From sequence record NC_021529.2: a DNA stretch of 64,000 nt; one strand, given 5' to 3'. Below, in pieces: positions 22,839 to 41,117 of the stretch. Position numbers and translations under genes: made by a program. Within the stretch, counting starts at the first letter, position 1. Every line of letters begins with the position of its first letter. The notes beneath the pieces are model-generated. The model searched no databases and was not told where the DNA came from. It was given only the letters and a program-made list of their open reading frames with translations.

Positions 22839-23363
22839 CTATTTTCTTCGACTTGCTTTATTTGCTTTTCGTTTCGCTCTTCTAAGCTCTTTACGTTTAG
22901 CAATCTTATCAGCACGTCGAACAGCATCATAATCCGCTGCACAAGACGCTGCAAACGCATCTGGCTTGAATACGGGCTCTTGACCCACATAACCCAGAAT
23001 AGTTCCCTTAGCTTCGTTATACGCGATATGAGACCGGTGTGCAGGGTCTGGGTTGATATCGACGTGAACTTCGAAGCCTCGCGGGCCACACATTGGTTTA
23101 ACTCTCAGTGCAGTTTCACCAGCTTTATAAACTTCAGTCATCAAACGACTTCGAATACCATCTTTGCTAGACATATAAGCAGGTTCAGTTTCGACAGATT
23201 TGAAAACTTGAGCACCTTTACTACCTTCAAGATGTATGATTATCACAGTAGCGTAACTGATCATGTCACTTTTACGCTTGCTATCACACCCGACGTATAT
23301 AGTACTATTCGGATGACTGTTGTTGATAGCTGTTTCTATTGCTTCCCAATCGAACATTTTCAC
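22839..23363 (-). CDS. RNase H-like YkuK (DUF458) family protein
   Basis: IYVGCDS, RLMTEV, EVHVDIN, KPDAFAAS.AAD. Confidence 0.8.
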   Translation of the reverse strand: MKMFDWEAIETAINNSHPNSTIYVGCDSKRKSDMISYATVIIIHLEGSKGAQVFKSVETEPAYMSSKDGIRSRLMTEVYKAGETALRVKPMCGPRGFEVHVDINPDPAHRSHIAYNEAKGTILGYVGQEPVFKPDAFAASCAADYDAVRRADKIAKRKELRRAKRKANKASRRK

Positions 23364-23409: not shown

Positions 23410-24846
23410 TTAAAAACTGTATCGGTCAACGCCGACAGTTTTCAGCATGATCTTGACTGGCTCAAGTTCACCACCTAACAGTGAAGTTAGAATTGATGGA
23501 CTACAACCCGAAACCAGTGCAGTACCTGCTTCACCTGATTTAACAGGAACGTTGTCTAAACGACCGCGAATGTTCCAGAACACTAGTTGAGGCATTTCAT
23601 AACCAGCACGTGCGTACTTAGCTTTGATTGCGTCAAAGTTTGCAACTTCGCCACGACCATACCAACCACCACCGGTGTTTGCTTGATCGAATTCCATGTC
23701 ACTCATGATAAGCAACTTGGTTGGCATATCTTCTTGTGAAAGATTTGCACGACTCGCACGCTCTAAAAGAACGTCGAAACATTTCCCGATGTTAGTGCTC
23801 ATGTCTTCGCCTGAGCGATTCATGTTGTCAAGACGCTCTTTTAGTGAGCTACCGCGCAACTGGTGGAAGTGCGGATTACTTGAGAACGAAATGAATTGAT
23901 CTTTGAAGATACCTTCATTGCGCTCAGCAACGTAAATGCCTAGAGACATTGCTACTTGCTTACAAGTAACTGCGTTAGCAGCGTGTACACCGTTGATCGG
24001 CGTGCTCATAGAGCCAGACACGTCTACAACAGGGATGATACGCTCATCAGAGCCTTCCATGTAGTTCGGTAGAGCTTTCCATTGCTCGTTCGCTACAGAT
24101 GCGTTACCGCGTTCTACGCTTTTAACAACATCGTATGGGAACAATGCACCAGCGTTGATCTTCGCTTCGCCTTTTTGAAGTGATTCGATGTAGTTTGTGT
24201 AACGAGTTTCAGCGTTACGACCAAATGCTTTTTGATAACGAGCAGACGCTACAGAAGGCAACTTACCGAAGTCGATTGCATCCCAATCTTTCGCACACAT
24301 CTTTTGTTCAACAGTGTCAGACAAAAGAGCAAGAATCTTACGCCACTGCTTAGAAGTCACGCCAAGAGACTTGATTGTGCGCTTGAACACGTGACCGTTT
24401 TTGCTGTTTTCGCGAGGGAACCACTTAGCAGCAAGACCATTCTTGTCGTTGACAATCGCATTTGACCACATAGTGATCGCGTCTTTTTCAAGTTTAGTAC
24501 CGAAAGCAACGATTAAGTCATCGAAACGACCTAATTCTGGTACTTTTGACATTACAGCTCGTGCCACTTCTGGCTGTTCATTACAAAGTTTAGCGAACAA
24601 AGTACGGAAAGTACCACGTTCACCCGCACCACCTCGAACGTCACGAGACCATAGCAAGATGCGAGTCGCTAGTTCTGGGTTTTCTGCAAACGCACGACCG
24701 AACAGTGTTTTAGACTGATCGTTGCCACGCATAGCAGCAATACCGAAGAACAAGTTTAGACACTCGTTACCTGAAGTGCTGTGGGTAACTGCACCGTTTG
24801 CTGTACGTGAATCGTTTGATTGCATAGCGTTCATAAATGCTGACAT
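23410..24846 (-). CDS. DUF2828-type helical + vWA protein (Ro60/TROVE-like architecture)
   Basis: RDVRGGAGER, GRFDD, AAKWFPRE, VVDVSGSM MIDAS, SDMEFD, VFWN; GAGG SD before ATG 24846. Confidence 0.8.
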   Translation of the reverse strand: MSAFMNAMQSNDSRTANGAVTHSTSGNECLNLFFGIAAMRGNDQSKTLFGRAFAENPELATRILLWSRDVRGGAGERGTFRTLFAKLCNEQPEVARAVMSKVPELGRFDDLIVAFGTKLEKDAITMWSNAIVNDKNGLAAKWFPRENSKNGHVFKRTIKSLGVTSKQWRKILALLSDTVEQKMCAKDWDAIDFGKLPSVASARYQKAFGRNAETRYTNYIESLQKGEAKINAGALFPYDVVKSVERGNASVANEQWKALPNYMEGSDERIIPVVDVSGSMSTPINGVHAANAVTCKQVAMSLGIYVAERNEGIFKDQFISFSSNPHFHQLRGSSLKERLDNMNRSGEDMSTNIGKCFDVLLERASRANLSQEDMPTKLLIMSDMEFDQANTGGGWYGRGEVANFDAIKAKYARAGYEMPQLVFWNIRGRLDNVPVKSGEAGTALVSGCSPSILTSLLGGELEPVKIMLKTVGVDRYSF

Positions 24847-25576: not shown

Positions 25577-25944
25577 AGATAATCCTTAATTGTCCCCGTG
25601 AAGTGACGAATACATGAGCTGTCAAGACGTTTTCGACCATCGCCTTCTACATCTGGTAGCGTATATTCATCGTTAAATGGTTGACCGCTTTCTTTTGCGA
25701 TCTCGTAAGCATCAGCTCGATTGAAGTACTCACCACAATAGTTGATGAATCCCTGTCCACGATCACCTAGCTCACTTCGGTGTTCAATCGTACAACCAAG
25801 CTCTTTGATTAGCTTAAAAACGCTTTGCATGTTTCGACCGAAGTGGCAGCTATCAGCTACTACAACTTCACGTTTTTCACCGTTTGGTAATGTAACTCGA
25901 ATTGCGTTTGCAGCAGCAGAGATCACATTGACGTGTTCTGACAT
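25573..25944 (-). CDS. Conserved phage hypothetical protein
   Basis: QGF...GEYFNRA.AYEIA..SGQ pattern. Confidence 0.7.
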   Translation of the reverse strand: MSEHVNVISAAANAIRVTLPNGEKREVVVADSCHFGRNMQSVFKLIKELGCTIEHRSELGDRGQGFINYCGEYFNRADAYEIAKESGQPFNDEYTLPDVEGDGRKRLDSSCIRHFTGTIKDYL

Positions 25945-26282
25945 GAATCATACCTCATAAAAATAGAACCAACACGCTTGTATTGATCAGTGTTCATTAA
26001 TAGACGTGCCATTTTAGTGTGAGCAACTGGATTACTCGTCACTAGAATTACAGTCTTTGGATAATTGCCATGATCAATTGCATGAGATAAAATGTGATAT
26101 CCCTCATGACCTAGTGCATCGCCTAAGTCATTGTCCATGAATAATGTGATATCAGTTAGATTCGTGTGCTTGATGAATTTCATGCCTTCTTTATATGTTC
26201 GAAGAACTAGCTTTTCATCTTCACGAACTGTATCTGCGGTTAACTTATTAATGTCACGCAGATCATCGATCAATACATACAT
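25923..26282 (-). CDS. Cyclic-phosphate-processing receiver-like domain protein
   Basis: IDDLR, MDNDLG, GY, VTSNP. Confidence 0.65.
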   Translation of the reverse strand: MYVLIDDLRDINKLTADTVREDEKLVLRTYKEGMKFIKHTNLTDITLFMDNDLGDALGHEGYHILSHAIDHGNYPKTVILVTSNPVAHTKMARLLMNTDQYKRVGSIFMRYDSCQNTSM

Positions 26283-26343
26283 AATATTTCTCTTGCTTAT
26301 TGAATAAATACTATCATACAGTTCAAACAAAGAGAAGTCAACA

Positions 26344-35992: not shown

Positions 35993-36901
35993 TCAATCGT
36001 ATAGACAAATTTTACCATGTTTTTCAAAATATTTTAAAATTTCTTCATATTCAACGTCAGAAAGTGTGCGAAATTCACGAAATCCGTCACCAGTAGAAGC
36101 GTCGTAAGGAAGTCTTGTGTATTTTTTATGCAAGTACGATTCATGCATACGAGCATCATTAACAGTTATAGACAATAAATTGTGTATATCAGTCCCACGT
36201 TTTCTCGCACATTCATACACTCTCTGTTTGACACGATAACTATTGCAAATTCCAATCTTACAATTTCCAGCATCATCAGTCCACATGTATAACCCATCGT
36301 GATTTCGATTTGAACATCCCGGACACCCAGAATAAAACTTCAGATTGGCTATTACAGGATTCCACGTCAATTCACACACATGACATGTATGCTCCCATGT
36401 CTTCCCAGAATTAGTGCCCCACGCATCGTTGTAAGGCGAAACAGTCAATGAAGGGTGTCTAGATTTTATAAATTCAACATATTCATCGTACGTATTCTTA
36501 CGACGGCACTCGGGACAGGAATATTTAGAAGTCCACGATACATTTCGCGAGTATTCACTACCACAGTCATGACAATGAAATTCAACTCTATTTCTGCCTC
36601 CTTTACCGTTACCAATATGAACGTATTCATGTTTGATAAGTTCGATTTGAGGATATTTTTCCTCGTGGGTTATGCGAAATTCTTCAAATTTCTCGTTGCG
36701 AACACATCGTTCACATGGCACAGTACCGTGCTTTGAAATTCGAGAATCTGACACTATATGAAAATCACCGCAAACAATACATTCTAGATAGTGATATGAA
36801 TCTAGAATTCTATGTTCCCCAAACCCATCAATAATATCACAACTTTGCTCAATTTCTGGTTTGAGTTCGGGATCTGAACATGAGCACTTATACGATATCA
36901 A
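35993..36901 (-). CDS. Zinc-ribbon repeat + GIY-YIG/T5orf172-type endonuclease
   Basis: Several CxxC pairs; LYMW..CKIGI..R..E..LH..Y..G..E.F. Confidence 0.7.
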   Translation of the reverse strand: MISYKCSCSDPELKPEIEQSCDIIDGFGEHRILDSYHYLECIVCGDFHIVSDSRISKHGTVPCERCVRNEKFEEFRITHEEKYPQIELIKHEYVHIGNGKGGRNRVEFHCHDCGSEYSRNVSWTSKYSCPECRRKNTYDEYVEFIKSRHPSLTVSPYNDAWGTNSGKTWEHTCHVCELTWNPVIANLKFYSGCPGCSNRNHDGLYMWTDDAGNCKIGICNSYRVKQRVYECARKRGTDIHNLLSITVNDARMHESYLHKKYTRLPYDASTGDGFREFRTLSDVEYEEILKYFEKHGKICLYD

Positions 36902-37181
36902 AGATTCTACAGCACGTCTAGCACCGTTTGTTTTCTTCAGTTCAATTTCACCAAAAGCAATTCACAGTCACTCTATCAATCTCAGGTGACATTTCTAATT
37001 TAGTCACACTTAGTCGTTCGAGTCCGGAAATGATAAATTCATAGCGCGCCAATTTAGATTTAGTTGGCGCGCTCATGCAGCCATTAGTTTTAGAGTGATT
37101 GTCAATTATAATCATAACATCTCATTCAATTATGAAGTTCTCAATATAATGTATCACAATTGACATATACTTGCAAATTAA

Positions 37182-37415
37182 TTAACCTAGATGCTTACGC
37201 TTATTCATTTCAACTAGAATTTCATCGTTGTAATGCTTGTTAAGCTGTACAAACTTCTTGTGTTGATCTTCTGTCAACTCATTCGTGTCATTTAGGTGCT
37301 TCAAGAACCCAAGAGGCTTACGAAACGACTTACGATACTCGTTCAGACGTTCATCTGTTAGATTATGCAACTGTTTCGGAGTAAGCAGTACTTTATTAAT
37401 ATCAAAATTACTCAT
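37182..37415 (-). CDS. Hypothetical protein
   Basis: GAGG SD. Confidence 0.6.
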   Translation of the reverse strand: MSNFDINKVLLTPKQLHNLTDERLNEYRKSFRKPLGFLKHLNDTNELTEDQHKKFVQLNKHYNDEILVEMNKRKHLG

Positions 37416-37440
37416 GTGTAACCTCTCTTTGTTTGTAAAA

Positions 37441-37556
37441 TGGTAGTCGGGGCTGGATTCGAACCAGCGACCACGTGCTTAACAGGCAATTGAAAGAGTG
37501 CTGGAGCGATACTTGACAGTATCATTCTTCGTGCTCTACCACTGAGCTACCCGACT
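37441..37556 (-). tRNA. tRNA-Asn(GTT) with a 41-nt insertion between nt 28 and 29
   Basis: Removing 37489-37529 gives a 75-nt cloverleaf with CGTGC/GCACG stem and CCA. Confidence 0.75.
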
Positions 37557-37561
37557 GTAAA

Positions 37562-37852
37562 TTATATGTTGAACTCACCACGTTCGAACGCTGCTAAGAA
37601 CTCAGCAGTTGAATCAAATGCAATGTATTCTTTACCAGTATGTTCTTTTGTTCGAACTCTAACTTTACCACCGCGAACTGCAACTTCGAATTGCCCGTGT
37701 TTAACATGAGCGTCTTTACGAACTGAACCTGACATCATTTTCTCAAGTTTCTTCGCAAAGTTTACGTCGTTGACGGTAGTAGGATTCTGTGGCATAAGTT
37801 TATCCCAACGAGAATCGCGCATTTCTGTAACAAACTCATCGAAAGTTTTCAT
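37562..37852 (-). CDS. Internal-protein-like late protein
   Basis: MKTFDEFVTE; CATAAATA at 37875-37882. Confidence 0.7.
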   Translation of the reverse strand: MKTFDEFVTEMRDSRWDKLMPQNPTTVNDVNFAKKLEKMMSGSVRKDAHVKHGQFEVAVRGGKVRVRTKEHTGKEYIAFDSTAEFLAAFERGEFNI

Positions 37853-37877
37853 TGTACTCTCCTTTTAAAGAAAGTAT

Positions 37878-38405
37878 TTATGTTCGAAGTTTGAACTTCA
37901 GATTTCGCCATTCAAATTTGGATACGTTTCGATTATGATAAAACGAATCCCAGTCAATTGAAATAGGACAATTCTTACTACCAACACGAGCTATGAATAC
38001 GTCGTGAGTCTTTCCGTATCGCTTTCTAAGCTCGTTTACGCGCTTATCGTAGTTAGCGATATAATCAGAGCAAGCTTTGTTATACGCAGCTTTAGAGAAG
38101 CGTTCAGTGCCTGCAAAACTACCGCTTAGATACGGACGGATTACTCGTACACGTTCAGTCGACCATCCCATATTGAAACTGTTCTCAATTTCACCCATGA
38201 TCTTGCCAGTCTTTTTACAACGAGCTAGAATAACCCAACAACGCTCACGTCGAAAATCTTTTCGAGTGTACACATTAACATGTTCTTCGACATAATTAGC
38301 GTGTTTGTTGTTGTAAATCGCTCGAAGACGCTTTCTCTCTTCAGGATCCATTGCAGCACGTTCTTCTTTAGAGAACGCTTGCGCAAATGTCATCGGCACA
38401 TTCAT
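37878..38405 (-). CDS. Hypothetical protein
   Basis: 175-aa ORF with ATGA coupling. Confidence 0.7.
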   Translation of the reverse strand: MNVPMTFAQAFSKEERAAMDPEERKRLRAIYNNKHANYVEEHVNVYTRKDFRRERCWVILARCKKTGKIMGEIENSFNMGWSTERVRVIRPYLSGSFAGTERFSKAAYNKACSDYIANYDKRVNELRKRYGKTHDVFIARVGSKNCPISIDWDSFYHNRNVSKFEWRNLKFKLRT

Positions 38406-38611
38406 ATCATACCTCGCTTACGCTTCAACTGACTTCGCTCAATCTGAGTAGTAATTTGCTTGTCTTTAGCTTTACTGCGACGAGAATTACCCCATCGAAA
38501 CCCAGCGCATAATCCGTGTTGATCACGCTTTAGCTTTTTTGCAAGCCAATGCGGGATATCTTCACCTTTACGCTGGTAATGCTTAGCAATATCAGTATAC
38601 GTTTTACCCAT
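38402..38611 (-). CDS. Small basic protein
   Basis: GGAGA SD. Confidence 0.6.
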   Translation of the reverse strand: MGKTYTDIAKHYQRKGEDIPHWLAKKLKRDQHGLCAGFRWGNSRRSKAKDKQITTQIERSQLKRKRGMI

Positions 38612-38622
38612 AATATTCTCCG

Positions 38623-38861
38623 TGGACGGGTGGGAGAATCGAACTCCCTACTGGCGCAACACATCGTCAACCCGATAAGAGTTTCGAAGTAAGAGCCTAT
38701 CAGCATATCAAATTCATTGTCTTTATTTCAACACACGACATTTCGACCTGTCAATGTGTCTTTTCTCGACACGTCCGAGTGATTCAGCACCATCACAGAT
38801 AGCGAATCTGCAACTGTACTAATGTTCGGCATACACTGCACACAGAGCACCAAGCCCCGCC
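38623..38861 (-). ncRNA. About 240-nt RNA with a 3' T arm and acceptor-like stem (tmRNA/T4 rnaC-D-like)
   Basis: 5' GGCGGGG, 3' GGGAG-TTCGATT-CTCCC-ACCCGTCCA. Confidence 0.45.
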
Positions 38862-38872
38862 ATAATAAATTG

Positions 38873-38950
38873 TGGTGACCCCAACAGGACTCGAACCTGT
38901 AACCTACCGATTATGAGTCGGTTGCTCTAACCGAGTTGAGCTATAGGACC
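38873..38950 (-). tRNA. tRNA CAT, probably Ile2 (lysidine type)
   Basis: Loop CTCATAA, ileX-like body, CCA. Confidence 0.85.
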
Positions 38951-38954
38951 ACGA

Positions 38955-39323
38955 TTATCTTTCAAGAAATCGACCAATCTTCGCTGCAAAAATGTTCTCT
39001 TCTTCTGCAATCAGAGCAACAGATTTTACTTGATGAAATACATCTTGATCATGTAAGTTATCTAGTTTACCTGCACATTTTGTCAGTTCTTTGATTGTAC
39101 GTCTAATCTCTATGCCGTCATGCTGACTTACTTCAGGATGCGTGTTGAGATTATCCATAACGGGAATTATTTTACCATAACATCCCATTCCGATAAAGTT
39201 TATCACAAGTCTATACTGCATTTCAACAGCAAATGAGCAATATTTTCTAAGATTGCGCTTTACAATTTCACAGCGATGTAAAATGCAATCTAACTCGCTG
39301 TTTATCTCATCAAACTTATTCAT
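38955..39323 (-). CDS. Hypothetical protein
   Basis: GAGG SD before MNKFDE. Confidence 0.6.
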   Translation of the reverse strand: MNKFDEINSELDCILHRCEIVKRNLRKYCSFAVEMQYRLVINFIGMGCYGKIIPVMDNLNTHPEVSQHDGIEIRRTIKELTKCAGKLDNLHDQDVFHQVKSVALIAEEENIFAAKIGRFLER

Positions 39324-39341
39324 AAACCCTCGTTTAAATCT

Positions 39342-39456
39342 GAGGTGAAGTGCAGGACTCGAACCTGCGACATCCGGCGTGCATGTGAATGCAGCATGAA
39401 ATCTTATCAGACTTCTTTTTTGGGCCGGCGCTCTAACCAACTGAGCTAACTTCACC
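39342..39456 (-). ncRNA. tRNA-like RNA with a 45-nt two-hairpin insert replacing the anticodon loop
   Basis: Canonical D and T arms, CCGGC/GCCGG stem, G-1:C73, ends TCA. Confidence 0.65.
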
Positions 39457-39469
39457 ATTGTAAAAACAC

Positions 39470-39599
39470 ATTGATGCGGGTGCAGGATTCGAACCTGCGT
39501 CACGATCTTATGAATGATATGCGAATTGATTGCCGTACAGATTCTTAACAGAATCAGTTTTTTGCTACGTGTGCTGCCACTACACCAACCCGCATCAAT
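39470..39599 (-). ncRNA. tRNA-like RNA (CAT, 8-nt loop) with a 49-nt insertion at 28/29
   Basis: 12-bp terminal stem, D and T arms, TACGGCAATCAATT motif. Confidence 0.65.
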
Positions 39600-39867
39600 A
39601 TGTTTTCGAGAGTGCTTGCATAGACCTAACGGTAATTCCCTACACAAGCACCAAAAAATCCTATTATATTTGCCTTAGCTAATCACAACACAACCTGGAG
39701 TCGTGCGCTTTAAGTACGGGTTGATTGACCCGTTCGCGTATGATTAGCGTAAAAGTATGATTACGCACCTTTTCTTCTTCAATGTCCAAGGCAAAAAGGA
39801 CGATGAATACTAGTGCGAGAAGATATACAATCAAATTGTTCACCTCGCTTAAACAGTGAGAGTACAT

Positions 39868-39990
39868 TGGTCGAGTGTAACAGAATCGAACTGTTCCCAC
39901 GATCTCCCTATGATATGCGTAAATTGGTTGCTGAATATAATCATGTCTGATTACAGTATGCTACGTGTGCTGCCACTACACCAACACTCG
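39868..39990 (-). tRNA. tRNA-Pro(AGG)-like with a 49-nt insertion at 28/29
   Basis: C1:G72, A73, CCA, loop ATAGGGA; 74-nt cloverleaf once the insert is removed. Confidence 0.7.
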
Positions 39991-40005
39991 ACCAATGTAC
40001 TCTCG

Positions 40006-40156
40006 ATATTTTAAATGTGCGCTACTTGCACGCCGACTGAGCGAATTTTAACTCAGCTAGTTTTTGTTCGTGAGCTAGTCCGCTAAGACTTCTCGCTGCT
40101 CGGCAGAACTTACCTGCCCCTATGTATTCATTGCGGCTAACGCACATTTAAAATAT
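40006..40156 (-). ncRNA. Multibranch structured RNA closed by a 16-bp stem
   Basis: ATATTTTAAATGTGCG/CGCACATTTAAAATAT with internal hairpins. Confidence 0.45.
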
Positions 40157-40160
40157 TACT

Positions 40161-40260
40161 CATCTTCAGCAAAGAGACAGAAACGATGAGTCTAGTCTGT
40201 TTATCAAAGTGTTCATCTTCAAGAAGAGGCGAAAACGATGAACTTAGTTCGCTTAATCAA
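40161..40260 (-). repeat. Two 47-nt tandem leader repeats with covarying stems
   Basis: 40161-40207 and 40214-40260. Confidence 0.6.
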
Positions 40261-40265
40261 CTGTG

Positions 40266-40400
40266 TTAATCTTAACATCTTTTCAGTGTAAGTCAACAAC
40301 TTTTTTCATTTATTTCATCGAGTTGAAAGTTTTTGTTTCTGTTTCTGTCTCTCGACTCGATGAAATACATTCTACAGACTTATTTTCGAAAGTCAACAAC
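40266..40400 (-). promoter_or_regulatory. Two strong tandem early promoters at the head of the RNA cluster
   Basis: GTTGTTGACT-17-TAAGAT and GTTGTTGACT-17-TAGAAT, with A-rich UP elements. Confidence 0.75.
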
Positions 40401-40414
40401 TTTTTCAAATTAAT

Positions 40415-40669
40415 TTAAACAGAAAGAATAATACCGCTTTCTGTCTCACCGCGCTCAAGCGCAGCATGTTTGATCTGTAGTTGTGATACCGCTTGTTGAA
40501 GCTCAAGAATAGCTTTGTCATAAAGCTTGTTGTTCTCTTTAAGCAAAGTAATCTGATCAGTCTGTAAGCCGACAATATACGTCAATAGAACGACGCTCTC
40601 ATCTGAATTAAGTGATTCAGGGTCTTCTTGATACTTCTTCAATACTGCTTCGGTAGATAGATCAGTCAT
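40415..40669 (-). CDS. Coiled-coil hypothetical protein
   Basis: Overlaps the 57B stop. Confidence 0.65.
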   Translation of the reverse strand: MTDLSTEAVLKKYQEDPESLNSDESVVLLTYIVGLQTDQITLLKENNKLYDKAILELQQAVSQLQIKHAALERGETESGIILSV

Positions 40670-41117
40670 TGTTAGCAACCCAATTTAAGTCTAGTGGTTC
40701 GATGTATTCATCAACAAGCCGAACTTCAGCGTTAACAAACATCGGTGTGATAACGTCATCATAAGATAACGTAACGTGAGGTTGATAGTCAGGGTAATCG
40801 TGTGTACCACCGATAGAGATAAGGTCTTCGTGACGCTCGACAAGTTCAGGACATGTCATTTTAGCAACAACTGCGTGCTTACCGTCTTGCGTTTTCCAGC
40901 AGTCAATTTGTTCGACAGTGGCAACGAAAGTTGTATCTACGGTAGGAACATCAATTTGTTTGCGACTAAAAAGCACAGTCACATGAAAATCATCTGGATC
41001 TAGCGGATTTTGCAGACGAAGCGTTTTCTGCAATTGAATAAGTTCTTGCTTACTCGCTTCGTCTACTTTGATACCAACGTAAGTTCCCTGACTTTCAAGG
41101 AACTTAGATAGTTTCAT
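40662..41117 (-). CDS. gp57B: 2H phosphoesterase, T4 gp57B/Acb1 homologue
   Basis: HVT x2; LRLQNP..HVT..FSR aligns to T4 57B; syntenic with 57A and gene 1. Confidence 0.85.
   Translation of the reverse strand: MKLSKFLESQGTYVGIKVDEASKQELIQLQKTLRLQNPLDPDDFHVTVLFSRKQIDVPTVDTTFVATVEQIDCWKTQDGKHAVVAKMTCPELVERHEDLISIGGTHDYPDYQPHVTLSYDDVITPMFVNAEVRLVDEYIEPLDLNWVANND

What the first reader, a model, noticed from the sequence alone, without database searches (positions are those of the whole stretch)
37441..37556. tRNA-Asn with a 41-nt intron-like insertion at position 28/29
Seen: deleting 37489-37529 restores a 75-nt cloverleaf (stem CGTGC/GCACG, loop CTGTTAA, CCA). The insert holds the hairpin GATAC-TGTCAA-GTATC plus CCAGCAC..CAAT. 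Known: bacterial tRNA introns are large group I introns in the anticodon loop, and short non-canonical introns are archaeal/eukaryotic and need EndA. Inference: either a new short intron type or a permanent protein-binding side arm. The discriminator is A rather than the usual Asn G73.
Basis: partly seen in the sequence, partly recalled or inferred. Interest (0 to 1): 0.8.

Follow-up and report, generated by a model that had tools for sequence, protein, structure and literature searches.

The report
tRNA-shaped phage RNA with side arm
The "tRNA-Asn with a 41-nt insert" is real, but it is one of four copies in this Vibrio phage of a widespread, strongly conserved family of tRNA-shaped RNAs with a structured side arm in the anticodon stem, and these RNAs most likely partner a phage Ro60-like RNA-binding protein rather than carry an intron.

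Summary
The window is Vibrio phage nt-1. 37441-37556(-) is a full tRNA body, and removing 37489-37529 gives a 75-nt tRNA-Asn(GUU). It is not a one-off or a pseudogene.

- It is 98-100% identical across about 30 KVP40-like phages whose flanks are about 79-85% identical.
- The window holds three paralogues (39341-39455, 39471-39594, 39868-39990).
- A covariance model finds 95 distinct relatives in Vibrio, Aeromonas, Yersinia/Erwinia, Synechococcus and uncultured phages.

All members share a module in the anticodon arm: an A-rich linker, a hairpin with a UGNNNA hexaloop (6/6 pairs covary), and an invariant C-N-G-C-A.

Several paralogue classes have no anticodon loop. Members with Ser- or Tyr-like loops lack the class-II variable arm. 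"Anticodons" differ between near-identical copies. The family is therefore not simply intron-bearing tRNAs.

In 22 of 65 loci a DUF2828/vWA protein lies nearby, always on the same strand, and within 1.4 kb in 15 of them. The nt-1 copy (23413-24846) models as a Ro60 fold.

Best reading: a new, tRNA-shaped class of Y-like RNA whose side arm binds the phage Ro60-like protein, acting in tRNA damage, repair or decay conflicts. Binding and function are inferred, not shown.

The parts
37441..37556 (-). Whole RNA gene (class A long tRNA-like RNA, 116 nt including the encoded CCA)
   Evidence: Rfam tRNA 49.8 bits. Family covariance model R1 gives 106.4 bits, against 56 bits or less for ordinary tRNAs. 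98-100% identical in about 30 phages.
37550..37556 (-). Acceptor stem, 5' strand (AGUCGGG)
   Evidence: Pairs with 37445-37451. Five of the seven pairs change on both sides in the 6E35.1a/D482 orthologues. All 7 pairs covary across the family.
37533..37547 (-). D arm (GCUC-AGUGGUA-GAGC)
   Evidence: Covariation of alignment columns corresponding to the 13-22-46 and 9-12-23 tertiary contacts suggests an L-shaped fold.
37530..37532 (-). Outer part of the anticodon stem, 5' strand (A26 C27 G28), pairing with 37473-37475
   Evidence: Helix 3: 3/3 pairs show compensatory change and about 81% of cells are paired.
37489..37529 (-). The 41-nt inserted module (side arm) between canonical positions 28 and 29
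   Evidence: The module is homologous in all family members.
37524..37529 (-). A-rich linker (AAGAAU)
   Evidence: An A-rich 5' linker is present in all classes.
37508..37523 (-). Hairpin HP1 (5 bp, hexaloop UGUCAA at 37513-37518)
   Evidence: 6/6 pairs of this helix have compensatory changes and 93-95% of cells are paired. Loop positions 3-4 are the most variable columns between close relatives.
37499..37503 (-). C-N-G-C-A motif (CAGCA here)
   Evidence: C, G, C and A are invariant in the 23-sequence alignment and at least 90% conserved in 95 distinct sequences.
37489..37498 (-). G-poor tail of the module, ending in AAU
   Evidence: Variable in length and ends in AU or UU in most three-way-junction members.
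37476..37488 (-). Inner 3-bp stem plus 7-nt anticodon-like loop CUGUUAA (GUU at 37481-37483)
   Evidence: Helix 5: 3/3 pairs are compensatory. The same GCCUGUUAAGC occurs in Vibrio, Aeromonas, Synechococcus and uncultured-phage members.
37452..37468 (-). T arm (GCUGG-UUCGAAU-CCAGC)
37441..37451 (-). Acceptor 3' strand (37445-37451), discriminator A (37444), CCA (37441-37443)
39341..39455 (-). Paralogue class B: the module replaces the anticodon loop inside a 5-bp stem CCGGC/GCCGG
   Evidence: Rfam tRNA 55.9 bits with a 44-nt block. R1 gives 92.7 bits. No U33-containing 7-nt loop can be restored by one deletion.
39471..39594 (-). Paralogue class C (three-way-junction type, 8-nt loop AUUCAUAA)
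   Evidence: R1 gives 105.3 bits. Orthologues differ in the loop.
39868..39990 (-). Paralogue class D (three-way-junction type, loop AUAGGGA)
   Evidence: R1 gives 88.1 bits. 98.4% identical to the KVP40 copy.
23413..24846 (-). Gene for the predicted protein partner: Ro60-like protein (DUF2828 + DUF7788/vWA, 478 aa). The partnership is inferred.
   Evidence: Pfam and PHROG 'RNA-binding protein'. AlphaFold model with pLDDT 78 and pTM 0.77. Best PDB folds are phage phiLo Ro60 9L5Y (E 1e-8) and D. radiodurans Rsr 2NVO (E 2e-7). Orthologues lie next to family RNAs on the same strand in 22 of 65 loci.

Best explanation
The locus encodes a stable, unspliced, tRNA-shaped non-coding RNA. It belongs to an uncurated family found in many large phages. 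The RNA has a complete tRNA body (acceptor, D and T arms). Its anticodon stem is turned into a three-way junction by a conserved side arm: an A-rich linker, a hairpin with a UGNNNA hexaloop, and an invariant C-N-G-C-A. An Asn-type anticodon stem-loop is still displayed.

Proposed mechanism, all inferred. The RNA is cut out of the early polycistronic transcript by the tRNA-processing enzymes. The side arm docks on the phage's Ro60-like ring protein (window 23413-24846). The resulting particle works like Ro60/Y-RNA particles: the tRNA-like part recruits or gates tRNA-handling partners such as exoribonuclease, repair enzymes or anticodon nucleases. This would protect or manage the tRNA pool during infection.

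Shown here: the sequence, the fold (by covariation), conservation, family size, gene linkage to the protein, and the protein's Ro60-like predicted fold.

Inferred: expression, lack of splicing, RNA-protein binding, and the biological role.
For: 1. Purifying selection. The RNA is 98.3% identical between nt-1 and KVP40. The adjacent ORF is 78.5% identical and gp57B 85.5%. Five acceptor pairs are kept by double changes in D482/6E35.1a.
2. Family. Model R1 separates members (63-110 bits) from ordinary tRNAs (56 bits or less). There are 4 members in the window and 95 distinct sequences overall.
3. Structure. 94% of cells are paired against 59% in shuffles. All six helices show compensatory change. 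Alignment columns corresponding to tRNA tertiary contacts covary.
4. The module is kept where decoding is impossible. Classes B and E have no anticodon loop. Members with Ser- or Tyr-like loops lack a long variable arm. Near-identical RNAs differ in the 'anticodon' (UGA against UGU). Position 36 and the hexaloop centre are the most variable columns between close relatives.
5. Protein linkage. A DUF2828/DUF7788 protein lies in the held flanks of 22 of 65 RNA loci, on the same strand in 22 of 22 and within 1.4 kb in 15. Only 711 of 50,697 phage records encode such a protein at all.
6. The nt-1 orthologue has a Ro60-like predicted fold. The mycobacteriophage orthologue is followed by a partial YrlA match. 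This fits the published pairing of Ro60 with tRNA-like Y RNAs in bacteria and phages (PMC4201824, PMC12135203).
7. Neighbourhood. A cyclic-phosphate-processing cREC protein and an RNase H-like protein flank the Ro-like gene, and Acb1 lies at the other end of the tRNA cluster. Metallophosphoesterases and, in Listeria phage AG20, RtcB and RNA ligase lie beside orthologues.
Against: - No expression, size or binding data exist for any member.
- In nt-1 the Ro-like gene is 12.6 kb from this locus. In Yersinia phage fHe-Yen9-04 it is about 195 kb away.
- R1 finds no family member next to the Ro-like gene in FelixO1, Listeria AG20, Campylobacter PC14 or mycobacteriophage Whirlwind, so the protein does not need this RNA family.
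- The side arm lacks the published Ro-binding motif GNCGAAN0-1G, and the RNA ends are in the acceptor stem rather than in a Ro-binding stem.
- The Asn-type anticodon stem-loop is conserved over very distant phages, and most Asn-type copies have G73. That would also fit a chargeable tRNA.
- Thermodynamic folding of the single sequence prefers another fold (-35.7 against -27.9 kcal/mol for the comparative structure).
Confidence: 0.55

Rival explanations
1. Intron-containing tRNA-Asn. The 41-nt arm is cut out by a protein endonuclease and the halves are rejoined, for example by phage or host RNA-repair enzymes. This would give a working 75-nt tRNA, and the excised arm might itself be the active product.
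For: - Exact removal gives a canonical tRNA-Asn.
- Canonical loops for Asn, Asp, Lys, Glu, Tyr, Arg and Cys, often with a fitting discriminator (G73 for Asp in 8 of 9 and for Asn in 11 of 17; U73 for Cys), occur on the 3' side of the module.
- An unrelated insert of about 55 nt occupies the same 28/29 site in other tRNA bodies.
- RNA end-healing and ligase genes are nearby in several phages.
Against: - No insert-less allele in 50,697 phage genomes.
- The arm is as conserved as the exons.
- Classes B and E have no restorable anticodon loop.
- Ser- and Tyr-type members lack class-II arms.
- Anticodons switch between near-identical copies.
- No bulge-helix-bulge, no covariation between the two junction strands and no ribozyme family match.
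- The phage already has two ordinary tRNA-Asn genes.
Confidence: 0.12
2. Working elongator tRNA-Asn that keeps the arm permanently. It is charged and used by the ribosome, and the three-way junction makes it resistant to nucleases that cut the anticodon stem.
For: - All tRNA core features and the Asn loop are conserved.
- Defence nucleases are known to cut anticodon stems. PARIS AriB cuts between positions 40 and 41 of tRNA-Lys, Thr and Asn (PMC12409363). OLD removes the anticodon arm (PMC12445682, title).
- Phage tRNAs are known counter-defences (PMC11555353).
Against: - From established ribosome structures (my knowledge, not tested here), the 30S P site contacts the backbone around positions 28-30, so a 41-nt arm there should clash.
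- A73 in nt-1 and KVP40 is not the Asn discriminator.
- Paralogues without anticodon loops keep the arm.
- It duplicates two normal tRNA-Asn genes.
Confidence: 0.1
3. Free-standing decoy or competitive inhibitor of anticodon-directed host nucleases. It acts without the Ro-like protein, and its two anticodon-like loops are tuned by selection.
For: - The hypervariable positions are the centre of the hexaloop and 'anticodon' position 36, on an otherwise fixed scaffold.
- The loop types seen (Asn, Asp, Tyr, Lys, Glu, Arg-UCU) are classes known as nuclease targets (PMC12409363, PMC13096335, and my own knowledge of colicin E5 and PrrC).
- Anti-defence neighbour Acb1.
Against: - It does not explain the invariant C-N-G-C-A and hairpin, or the same-strand linkage to the Ro-like gene.
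- No nuclease partner has been identified.
Confidence: 0.15
4. Decaying tRNA pseudogene, as annotated in KVP40 (tRNA-Pseudo-3).
For: Public records annotate it as a pseudo-tRNA or give inconsistent identities: Val, Ile, OTHER.
Against: - Higher conservation than neighbouring genes.
- Compensatory changes.
- 95 distinct relatives with the same architecture.
Confidence: 0.02

Closest known systems
Bacterial and phage Y RNAs of the YrlA type (Rfam RF02553; Chen et al. 2014, PMC4201824)
   Same: Both are about 100-130-nt non-coding RNAs with a tRNA-like D/T/acceptor domain. Both are encoded on the same strand near a Ro60-type ring protein, often in several copies, and in an RNA-repair context. The orthologous phage protein in mycobacteriophage Whirlwind is followed by a partial YrlA match.
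   Different: - Here the RNA is a complete cloverleaf whose 5' and 3' ends form the acceptor stem with CCA. The presumed protein-binding module sits in the anticodon stem.
- The conserved motif is a hairpin plus C-N-G-C-A, not GNCGAAN0-1G.
- An anticodon-like 7-nt loop is kept.
- The Rfam YrlA model does not match the locus.
- The partner protein is of the DUF2828/DUF7788 type and is not detected as TROVE by sequence.
Thermus phage phiLo Ro60 with Yrl1/Yrl2 (PMC12135203; PDB 9L5Y)
   Same: A phage-encoded Ro60-fold protein with phage-encoded partner RNAs next to its gene. It is the best structural match to the nt-1 protein model. It was proposed to engage host PNPase.
   Different: The phiLo RNAs are stem-bulge-stem Y RNAs with a CGAA motif, not tRNA cloverleaves. 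Sequence identity of the proteins is about 14%.
KVP40 'tRNA-Pseudo-3/4/5' and similar annotations (Aeh1 'pseudo', PX29 'tRNA-Leu' with intron, fHe-Yen9-04 'tRNA-Pseudo')
   Same: These are the same genes. The KVP40 Pseudo-3 copy is 98.3% identical to the finding.
   Different: These are labels from tRNA finders only. No family, structure, conservation or partner was described in the papers I could read. Two KVP40 copies are not annotated at all.
Phage T4 species 1 and 2 stable RNAs (rnaC, rnaD)
   Same: Small RNAs of about 120-140 nt and unknown function, encoded inside a T4-type tRNA cluster.
   Different: No detectable homology. R1 gives 21.9 bits for rnaC and nothing for rnaD. There is no hairpin plus C-N-G-C-A module.
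Archaeal and eukaryal short tRNA introns at non-canonical positions
   Same: A short insert in the anticodon stem whose removal restores a cloverleaf.
   Different: There is no bulge-helix-bulge. No EndA-type enzyme is known in bacteria or their phages. The insert is conserved and is retained in non-restorable paralogues.
Engineered 'tRNA scaffold' for expressing RNAs in E. coli (my knowledge: Ponchon and Dardel 2007)
   Same: A foreign structured RNA is grafted into the anticodon stem of a tRNA body, which gives processing and stability.
   Different: This one is natural, and the grafted module is conserved across phage families.

Membership tests
Canonical elongator tRNA (tRNA-Asn) | Cloverleaf body: 7-bp acceptor stem, D arm with GG, T arm with UUCGA, tertiary covariation | tested here: met
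   Rfam tRNA 49.8 bits over model positions 1-71. Helices and alignment columns corresponding to the 13-22-46 contact covary.
Canonical elongator tRNA (tRNA-Asn) | Uninterrupted 5-bp anticodon stem with 7-nt loop in a molecule of about 74-95 nt | tested here: not met
   A 41-nt module lies between positions 28 and 29. ARAGORN does not call the 116-nt sequence without intron mode.
Canonical elongator tRNA (tRNA-Asn) | Asn identity set: GUU anticodon plus G73 (established for E. coli; my knowledge) | tested here: inconclusive
   GUU is present. The discriminator is A in nt-1, KVP40 and D482, but G in VS1 and in 11 of 17 distinct Asn-type relatives.
Canonical elongator tRNA (tRNA-Asn) | Aminoacylation and decoding on the ribosome | not testable with these tools
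   Needs charging and translation assays.
Protein-spliced short tRNA intron (archaeal/eukaryal type) | Removal of one contiguous insert restores a canonical tRNA | tested here: met
   Met for this locus. Not met for paralogue classes B and E.
Protein-spliced short tRNA intron (archaeal/eukaryal type) | Bulge-helix-bulge at the two junctions | tested here: not met
   Inspection of the junctions in all classes found no conserved 4-bp helix flanked by 3-nt bulges. There is no covariation between the two junction strands.
Protein-spliced short tRNA intron (archaeal/eukaryal type) | Splicing endonuclease available; spliced product detectable | not tested
   Only 17 window ORFs around the cluster were scanned, and none is EndA-like. 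No RNA data.
Protein-spliced short tRNA intron (archaeal/eukaryal type) | Intron-less alleles among relatives | tested here: not met
   All 48 phage records that cover at least 80% of the query carry the insert. The other hits match only the 3' half of unrelated tRNAs.
Group I intron in a tRNA gene | Ribozyme core of at least about 200 nt, inserted in the anticodon loop | tested here: not met
   The insert is 41 nt and lies in the stem. Rfam gives no intron family match.
tRNA pseudogene | Neutral decay: no excess conservation, broken pairs | tested here: not met
   98.3% identity against 78.5-85.5% for neighbouring genes. Pairs are kept by double substitutions.
Y RNA / YrlA | Encoded within about 4 kb of, and on the same strand as, a Ro60 orthologue (criterion of PMC4201824) | tested here: inconclusive
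   For the family, a Ro-like gene lies in the held flanks of 22 of 65 loci, on the same strand in 22 of 22 and within 4 kb in 16. For this locus it is on the same strand but 12.6 kb away.
Y RNA / YrlA | tRNA-like domain with D and T arms | tested here: met
Y RNA / YrlA | GNCGAAN0-1G motif near the 5' end, with the RNA ends forming the Ro-binding stem | tested here: not met
   The ends form the acceptor stem. The conserved motif is C-N-G-C-A after a hairpin.
Y RNA / YrlA | Score at or above Rfam's gathering threshold for RF02553 (69 bits) | tested here: not met
   No YrlA match at the locus. The only window match is 23.5 bits, straddling two other genes.
Y RNA / YrlA | Physical binding to the Ro60-type protein | not testable with these tools
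   Needs co-purification or EMSA.
Ro60 / TROVE-vWA proteins (for the predicted partner, window 23413-24846) | HEAT-repeat ring followed by a vWA domain | tested here: met
   Model with pLDDT 78 and pTM 0.77. The top three PDB matches are Ro60 chains (9L5Y_A E 1e-8, TM 0.54/0.56; 2NVO E 2e-7). The next matches cover only the vWA domain. Sequence search alone finds no Ro60.
T4 rnaC/rnaD stable RNAs | Sequence or structure homology | tested here: not met
   R1 gives 21.9 bits for rnaC and no hit for rnaD.

The most novel reading that the evidence does not exclude
The side arm is a true short intron. It would be cut out at the base of the three-way junction and the halves rejoined by the phage's RNA-repair set (Ro60-like protein, cyclic-phosphate-processing cREC protein, ligase). 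That would be the first protein-dependent splicing of a short tRNA intron in a bacterial virus, with the tRNA-shaped Y-like paralogues as relatives that lost the exon function.
Probability: 0.08. Interest if true: 0.95.

Novelty: new variant of a known kind. Interest (0 to 1): 0.7.

Why it matters
Ro60/Y-RNA particles are known in animals, bacteria and a few phages, but why bacterial Y RNAs imitate tRNA is still unresolved. This family is the most extreme case. It is a full cloverleaf that can be cut out and given CCA like a tRNA, it carries a conserved arm in the anticodon stem, and it still shows an anticodon-like loop whose triplet changes quickly between close relatives.

It occurs in many large phages. 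The isolates infect Vibrio, Aeromonas, Cronobacter, Yersinia, Erwinia and Synechococcus. It also occurs on dozens of uncultured viral contigs and one Lachnospiraceae metagenome bin. It sits beside tRNA arrays, RNA end-healing genes and anti-defence genes.

If the RNA does bind the phage Ro60-like protein, several things follow:
- It gives a tractable system (V. natriegens with nt-1, or co-expression in E. coli) for asking what the tRNA mimicry is for.
- It links Ro60 biology to the current tRNA-centred arms race between phages and bacterial immunity.
- It would correct two decades of annotation. These genes are labelled pseudo-tRNA, tRNA-Val/Ile/Leu/Phe with intron, or are covered by false protein calls.
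- It would justify a new RNA family model.

Tried and rejected
- T4 rnaC/rnaD as homologues: no shared module and weak scores.
- tmRNA-like reading starting at the GCA of the motif: only class D reaches a stop in frame, so it is inconsistent (inspection).
- Hammerhead- or pistol-type self-cleavage: the hexaloop resembles CUGANGA only in some members, the loop does not covary with anything, and Rfam gives no match.
- Bulge-helix-bulge formed by the A-rich linker and the U-rich tail: pairs can be drawn in nt-1, D482 and BUCT_2 but not in other members.
- Alternative pairing of the CCAGC in the arm with the T stem or with UGCCUG. This is favoured by energy, but the motif is invariant while the supposed partners change, so comparison does not support it.
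- Recent origin from the phage's own tRNA-Asn genes: not similar outside universal positions.
- The search for related loci with gp57B returned only KVP40 itself.
- Pfam on the ORFs that flank the finding (ORF195, ORF196, ORF197 and others) gave nothing. ORF195 homologues do recur next to the RNAs in Vibrio and Aeromonas phages and in Cronobacter phage S13, but I have no function for them.
- R1 finds no member beside the Ro-like gene of FelixO1, AG20, PC14 or Whirlwind.
- A scan of 185,579 prokaryotic genomes with an Asn-type pattern found clear members (76 and 86 bits) only on one Lachnospiraceae bin contig that carries a tRNA cluster and looks like a phage.
- Nine literature searches found no description of this family. 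The KVP40 genome paper itself is not held.
Full report
**Identity of the window and check of the observation**

The window is Vibrio phage nt-1 (HQ317393.2, 100% identity; window position 37000 is record position 99000). All genes discussed lie on the minus strand. ARAGORN finds 28 ordinary tRNA genes between 27.8 and 39 kb, but not the element in question.

The element at 37441-37556(-) reads as acceptor, D arm, A-C-G, a 41-nt insert, then UGC-CUGUUAA-GCA-CG, variable loop, T arm, acceptor, A and CCA. Rfam's tRNA model matches it from end to end at 49.8 bits (E 2.7e-8), leaving the middle unaligned. Joining the flanks of 37489-37529 gives a 75-nt sequence that ARAGORN calls tRNA-Asn(gtt).

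With introns allowed, ARAGORN calls the intact element tRNA-Ala(ggc). Public records label the same gene Val, Ile or pseudo. tRNA finders have no consistent reading of it.

**It is not unique**

The Rfam scan showed a second long tRNA at 39344-39455 with 44 nt in place of the anticodon loop. Reading upstream showed two more. KVP40 annotates the orthologues as tRNA-Pseudo-3, -4 and -5. phi-Grn1 annotates five long "tRNAs" of 113-122 nt.

A 23-sequence alignment shows that all of them share one module inside the anticodon arm:
- an A-rich linker;
- a 5-6-bp hairpin with a six-base loop that starts UG and ends A;
- a motif with invariant C, G, C, A (C-N-G-C-A);
- a G-poor tail.

In most members, including the finding, the module is inserted between positions 28 and 29. 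This makes a three-way junction: an outer stem (A-C-G/C-G-U), the hairpin, and an inner 3-bp stem with a 7-nt loop.

**Comparative support for the fold**

On the 23-sequence alignment the proposed structure has 93% of cells paired, against 64% after shuffling and 34-44% when partners are slid. I built a covariance model, R1, from it.

R1 separates family members (63-110 bits) from ordinary tRNAs (56 bits or less). It finds exactly four members in the window: 37441-37556, 39341-39455, 39471-39594 and 39868-39990.

In all there are 109 hits and 95 distinct sequences. On these:
- 94% of cells are paired against 59% in shuffles;
- every helix shows changes on both sides;
- the hairpin shows this in 6 of 6 pairs and the inner stem in 3 of 3.

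Alignment columns corresponding to the 13-22-46 and 9-12-23 tertiary contacts of tRNA also covary. No further long-range pairing appeared.

Single-sequence energy minimisation prefers other folds: -35.7 kcal/mol, against -27.9 for the comparative structure. The competing pairs involve the invariant motif and are not supported by comparison.

**Conservation**

The finding is 98-100% identical in about 30 KVP40-like phages. Between nt-1 and KVP40:

| Feature | Identity |
|---|---|
| The finding (class A) | 98.3% |
| Paralogue D | 98.4% |
| Adjacent ORF195 | 78.5% |
| gp57B | 85.5% |
| Ordinary tRNAs | 70-100% |

The upstream ORF196 is not even present in KVP40.

In the more distant 6E35.1a/D482 group, five acceptor pairs are kept by double substitutions while the D arm and the Asn stem-loop are unchanged. 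No insert-less orthologue exists among 50,697 phage records. The phage's two ordinary tRNA-Asn genes are not close relatives. The pseudogene reading is contradicted.

**Why the family is not simply "tRNAs with an intron"**

- In classes B and E, and in similar members from other phages, the module replaces the anticodon loop. No single deletion yields a 7-nt loop with U33.
- Members whose loops look like Ser or Tyr anticodon loops have 4-6-nt variable regions. They therefore lack the long arm that bacterial SerRS and TyrRS need (that requirement is established knowledge).
- Orthologues of class C carry different loops. Two near-identical uncultured-phage RNAs differ only by UGA against UGU in the "anticodon".
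- Over 32 comparisons of close relatives, the most variable columns of the whole molecule are the two central bases of the hexaloop (6 and 9 changes). "Anticodon" position 36 has 7 changes, while neighbouring loop bases never change.

On the other side, loops typical of Asn, Asp, Lys, Glu, Tyr, Arg-UCU and Cys are common, with discriminators that often fit. The Asn-type stem-loop is conserved from Vibrio to Aeromonas and Synechococcus phages. So the members probably descend from real tRNAs, and the displayed loop seems to matter.

**The protein partner**

I compared all ORFs flanking the RNAs.

A protein of about 470-520 aa lies next to them, on the same strand, in 15 loci from about 11 lineages. 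These include Synechococcus phage BUCT-ZZ01 and a contig 99.6% identical to Cronobacter phage S13. Taking the whole held stretches (median flank only 3 kb), 22 of 65 RNA loci contain it. It is on the same strand in all 22 and within 1.4 kb in 15.

Pfam assigns it DUF2828 plus DUF7788 (vWA-like). Only 711 of 50,697 phage records encode a relative. Those records include representatives of the isolate groups that carry the RNAs: KVP40, D481, Aeh1, LAh_6, fHe-Yen9-04 and S13 (BUCT-ZZ01 also carries it). Mycobacteriophage annotators call it "Ro-like RNA binding protein".

The nt-1 copy is in the window at 23413-24846(-). It lies 3 kb beyond the last tRNA and 12.6 kb from the finding. Sequence search against solved structures finds nothing useful. 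An AlphaFold model (pLDDT 78, pTM 0.77) matches Ro60 of Thermus phage phiLo (9L5Y, E 1e-8, TM 0.54/0.56) and D. radiodurans Rsr (2NVO, E 2e-7) over its whole length. All other matches cover only the vWA domain.

In mycobacteriophage Whirlwind the orthologue is followed by a partial Rfam YrlA match.

Published work shows:
- Ro60 orthologues in more than 250 bacteria and 22 phages have tRNA-like Y RNAs encoded nearby on the same strand, and more variants were expected (PMC4201824);
- a phage Ro60 binds two phage Y-like RNAs and host PNPase (PMC12135203);
- such proteins, with a tRNA-like partner, are viewed as an RNA-repair platform in jumbo phages (PMC7824862).

**Neighbourhood**

In nt-1 the Ro-like gene is flanked by a cyclic-phosphate-processing cREC protein (25923-26330) and an RNase H-like protein (22839-23363). 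At the other end of the tRNA cluster, directly upstream of paralogues D, C and B, lies gp57B, which is Acb1, the anti-CBASS nuclease.

Elsewhere the Ro-like gene sits beside tRNA arrays. Its neighbours include metallophosphoesterases, Band-7 proteins and, in Listeria phage AG20, RtcB and an RNA ligase.

Promoter-like sites lie upstream of paralogue D on the minus strand, and no minus-strand terminator-like site was found across 36900-40700. These are consensus matches only. The finding itself lies 5 nt after ORF196 and 25 nt before ORF195, so it must be cut out of a polycistronic transcript.

**Interpretation**

The best-supported reading is a new, tRNA-shaped class of Y-like RNA. The tRNA body would provide processing and stability. 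The conserved arm in the anticodon stem is the likely docking site for the Ro60-like protein. The displayed, fast-evolving anticodon-like loops suggest contact with something that reads anticodon loops. That could be damaged or targeted tRNAs, anticodon nucleases or repair enzymes, in the conflict over the tRNA pool that is now well documented (PMC12409363, PMC11555353, PMC13096335, PMC12445682).

Only the sequence-level statements are shown. Binding, lack of splicing and the role are inferred.

The weak points:
- the 12.6-kb distance in nt-1;
- the absence of the family beside the Ro-like gene in several phage groups;
- the lack of the published Ro-binding motif;
- the conservation of a chargeable-looking Asn arm.

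Splicing, or direct use as a nuclease-resistant tRNA, therefore remain open for this copy, at low probability.

**Novelty**

The genes have been visible since the KVP40 genome of 2003, but only as "pseudo-tRNAs". Rfam 15 has no family for them. A review of non-canonical tRNAs does not mention them. Nine literature searches found no description.

Ro60/Y-RNA systems with tRNA mimicry are known, so this is a new variant of a known kind rather than a new category.

Noticed in passing
window 40662-41117 (-): The gp57B homologue is Pfam Acb1 (anti-CBASS nuclease, E 7e-47). It lies directly upstream, on the same strand, of the long tRNA-like genes D, C and B.
   Followed up: partly
window 25923-26330 (-) and 22839-23363 (-): A cREC_REC 'cyclic-phosphate processing receiver' protein (E 6e-16) and an RNase H-like PF04308 protein (E 4e-17) flank the Ro60-like gene. 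Together they look like an RNA end-healing or repair cluster at the far end of the tRNA array.
   Followed up: partly
IMG/VR L051 2302-2433(-) and 2070-2198(-); L078 3487-3611(+); L088 2912-3038(+) and 3061-3170(+): A second, unrelated insert of about 55 nt (a CCGCAAGGG hairpin, then GGGUUAYC) occupies the 28/29 site or an adjacent position in the 5' strand of the anticodon stem in Asn- and Cys-type tRNA bodies. It occurs in an uncultured phage and in Chloroflexi and Sphingobacterium metagenome bins. One copy has no anticodon arm at all.
   Followed up: no
L010 1376-1496; L013 1069-1188; L014 1069-1188; L015 1068-1188: Aeromonas T4-like phages carry, just upstream of their two family members, a tRNA-like gene of about 121 nt. 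In PX29 it has two UUCGAAU T-arm-like hairpins inside one acceptor stem (the only copy I read). R1 gives 34-45 bits.
   Followed up: no
window 37182-37415 (-) (ORF195); L010 1814-2092; L160 3211-3483: A small protein of 77-92 aa (PHROG 9405, no Pfam) recurs next to the long tRNA-like genes in Vibrio phages, Aeromonas phages and Cronobacter phage S13 (about 33% identity, E about 1e-5). In Aeh1 it is annotated as rI.1-like.
   Followed up: partly
window 38955-39647 (-); L011 1509-1694; QD01 record at 182244-182359: Protein-coding calls laid over these RNA genes are probably false. Examples are a 230-aa ORF spanning paralogues B and C in the window, LAh_9 gp040, and a QD01 'hypothetical protein' over class A.
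   Followed up: no
window 35993-36901 (-): ORF194 (302 aa), at the upstream edge of the tRNA array, between it and the finding, matches PHROG endonuclease and HNH endonuclease families. It is likely a homing endonuclease, like segB in the T4 tRNA cluster.
   Followed up: no
L158 1267-1385 versus L099 3422-3540: Two near-identical uncultured-phage family members differ in the 'anticodon' (UUUGAAA against UUUGUAA). This is an identity switch that a working tRNA could hardly tolerate.
   Followed up: partly
L001 3781-3906 (-) and 4171-4293 (-): KVP40 has two more family members (classes C and D) that its record does not annotate. nt-1 lacks class E, which KVP40 (Pseudo-4), phi-Grn1 and D482 have.
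   Followed up: yes
L211 (Listeria phage AG20) 4953-11455: The Ro-like gene there is followed within 5 kb by a phosphohydrolase, an RtcB 'tRNA splicing ligase', a 'tRNA amidotransferase' and an RNA ligase, and is preceded by the tRNA array. R1 finds no family member, so another partner RNA may lie in the 396-nt gap upstream of the gene.
   Followed up: no
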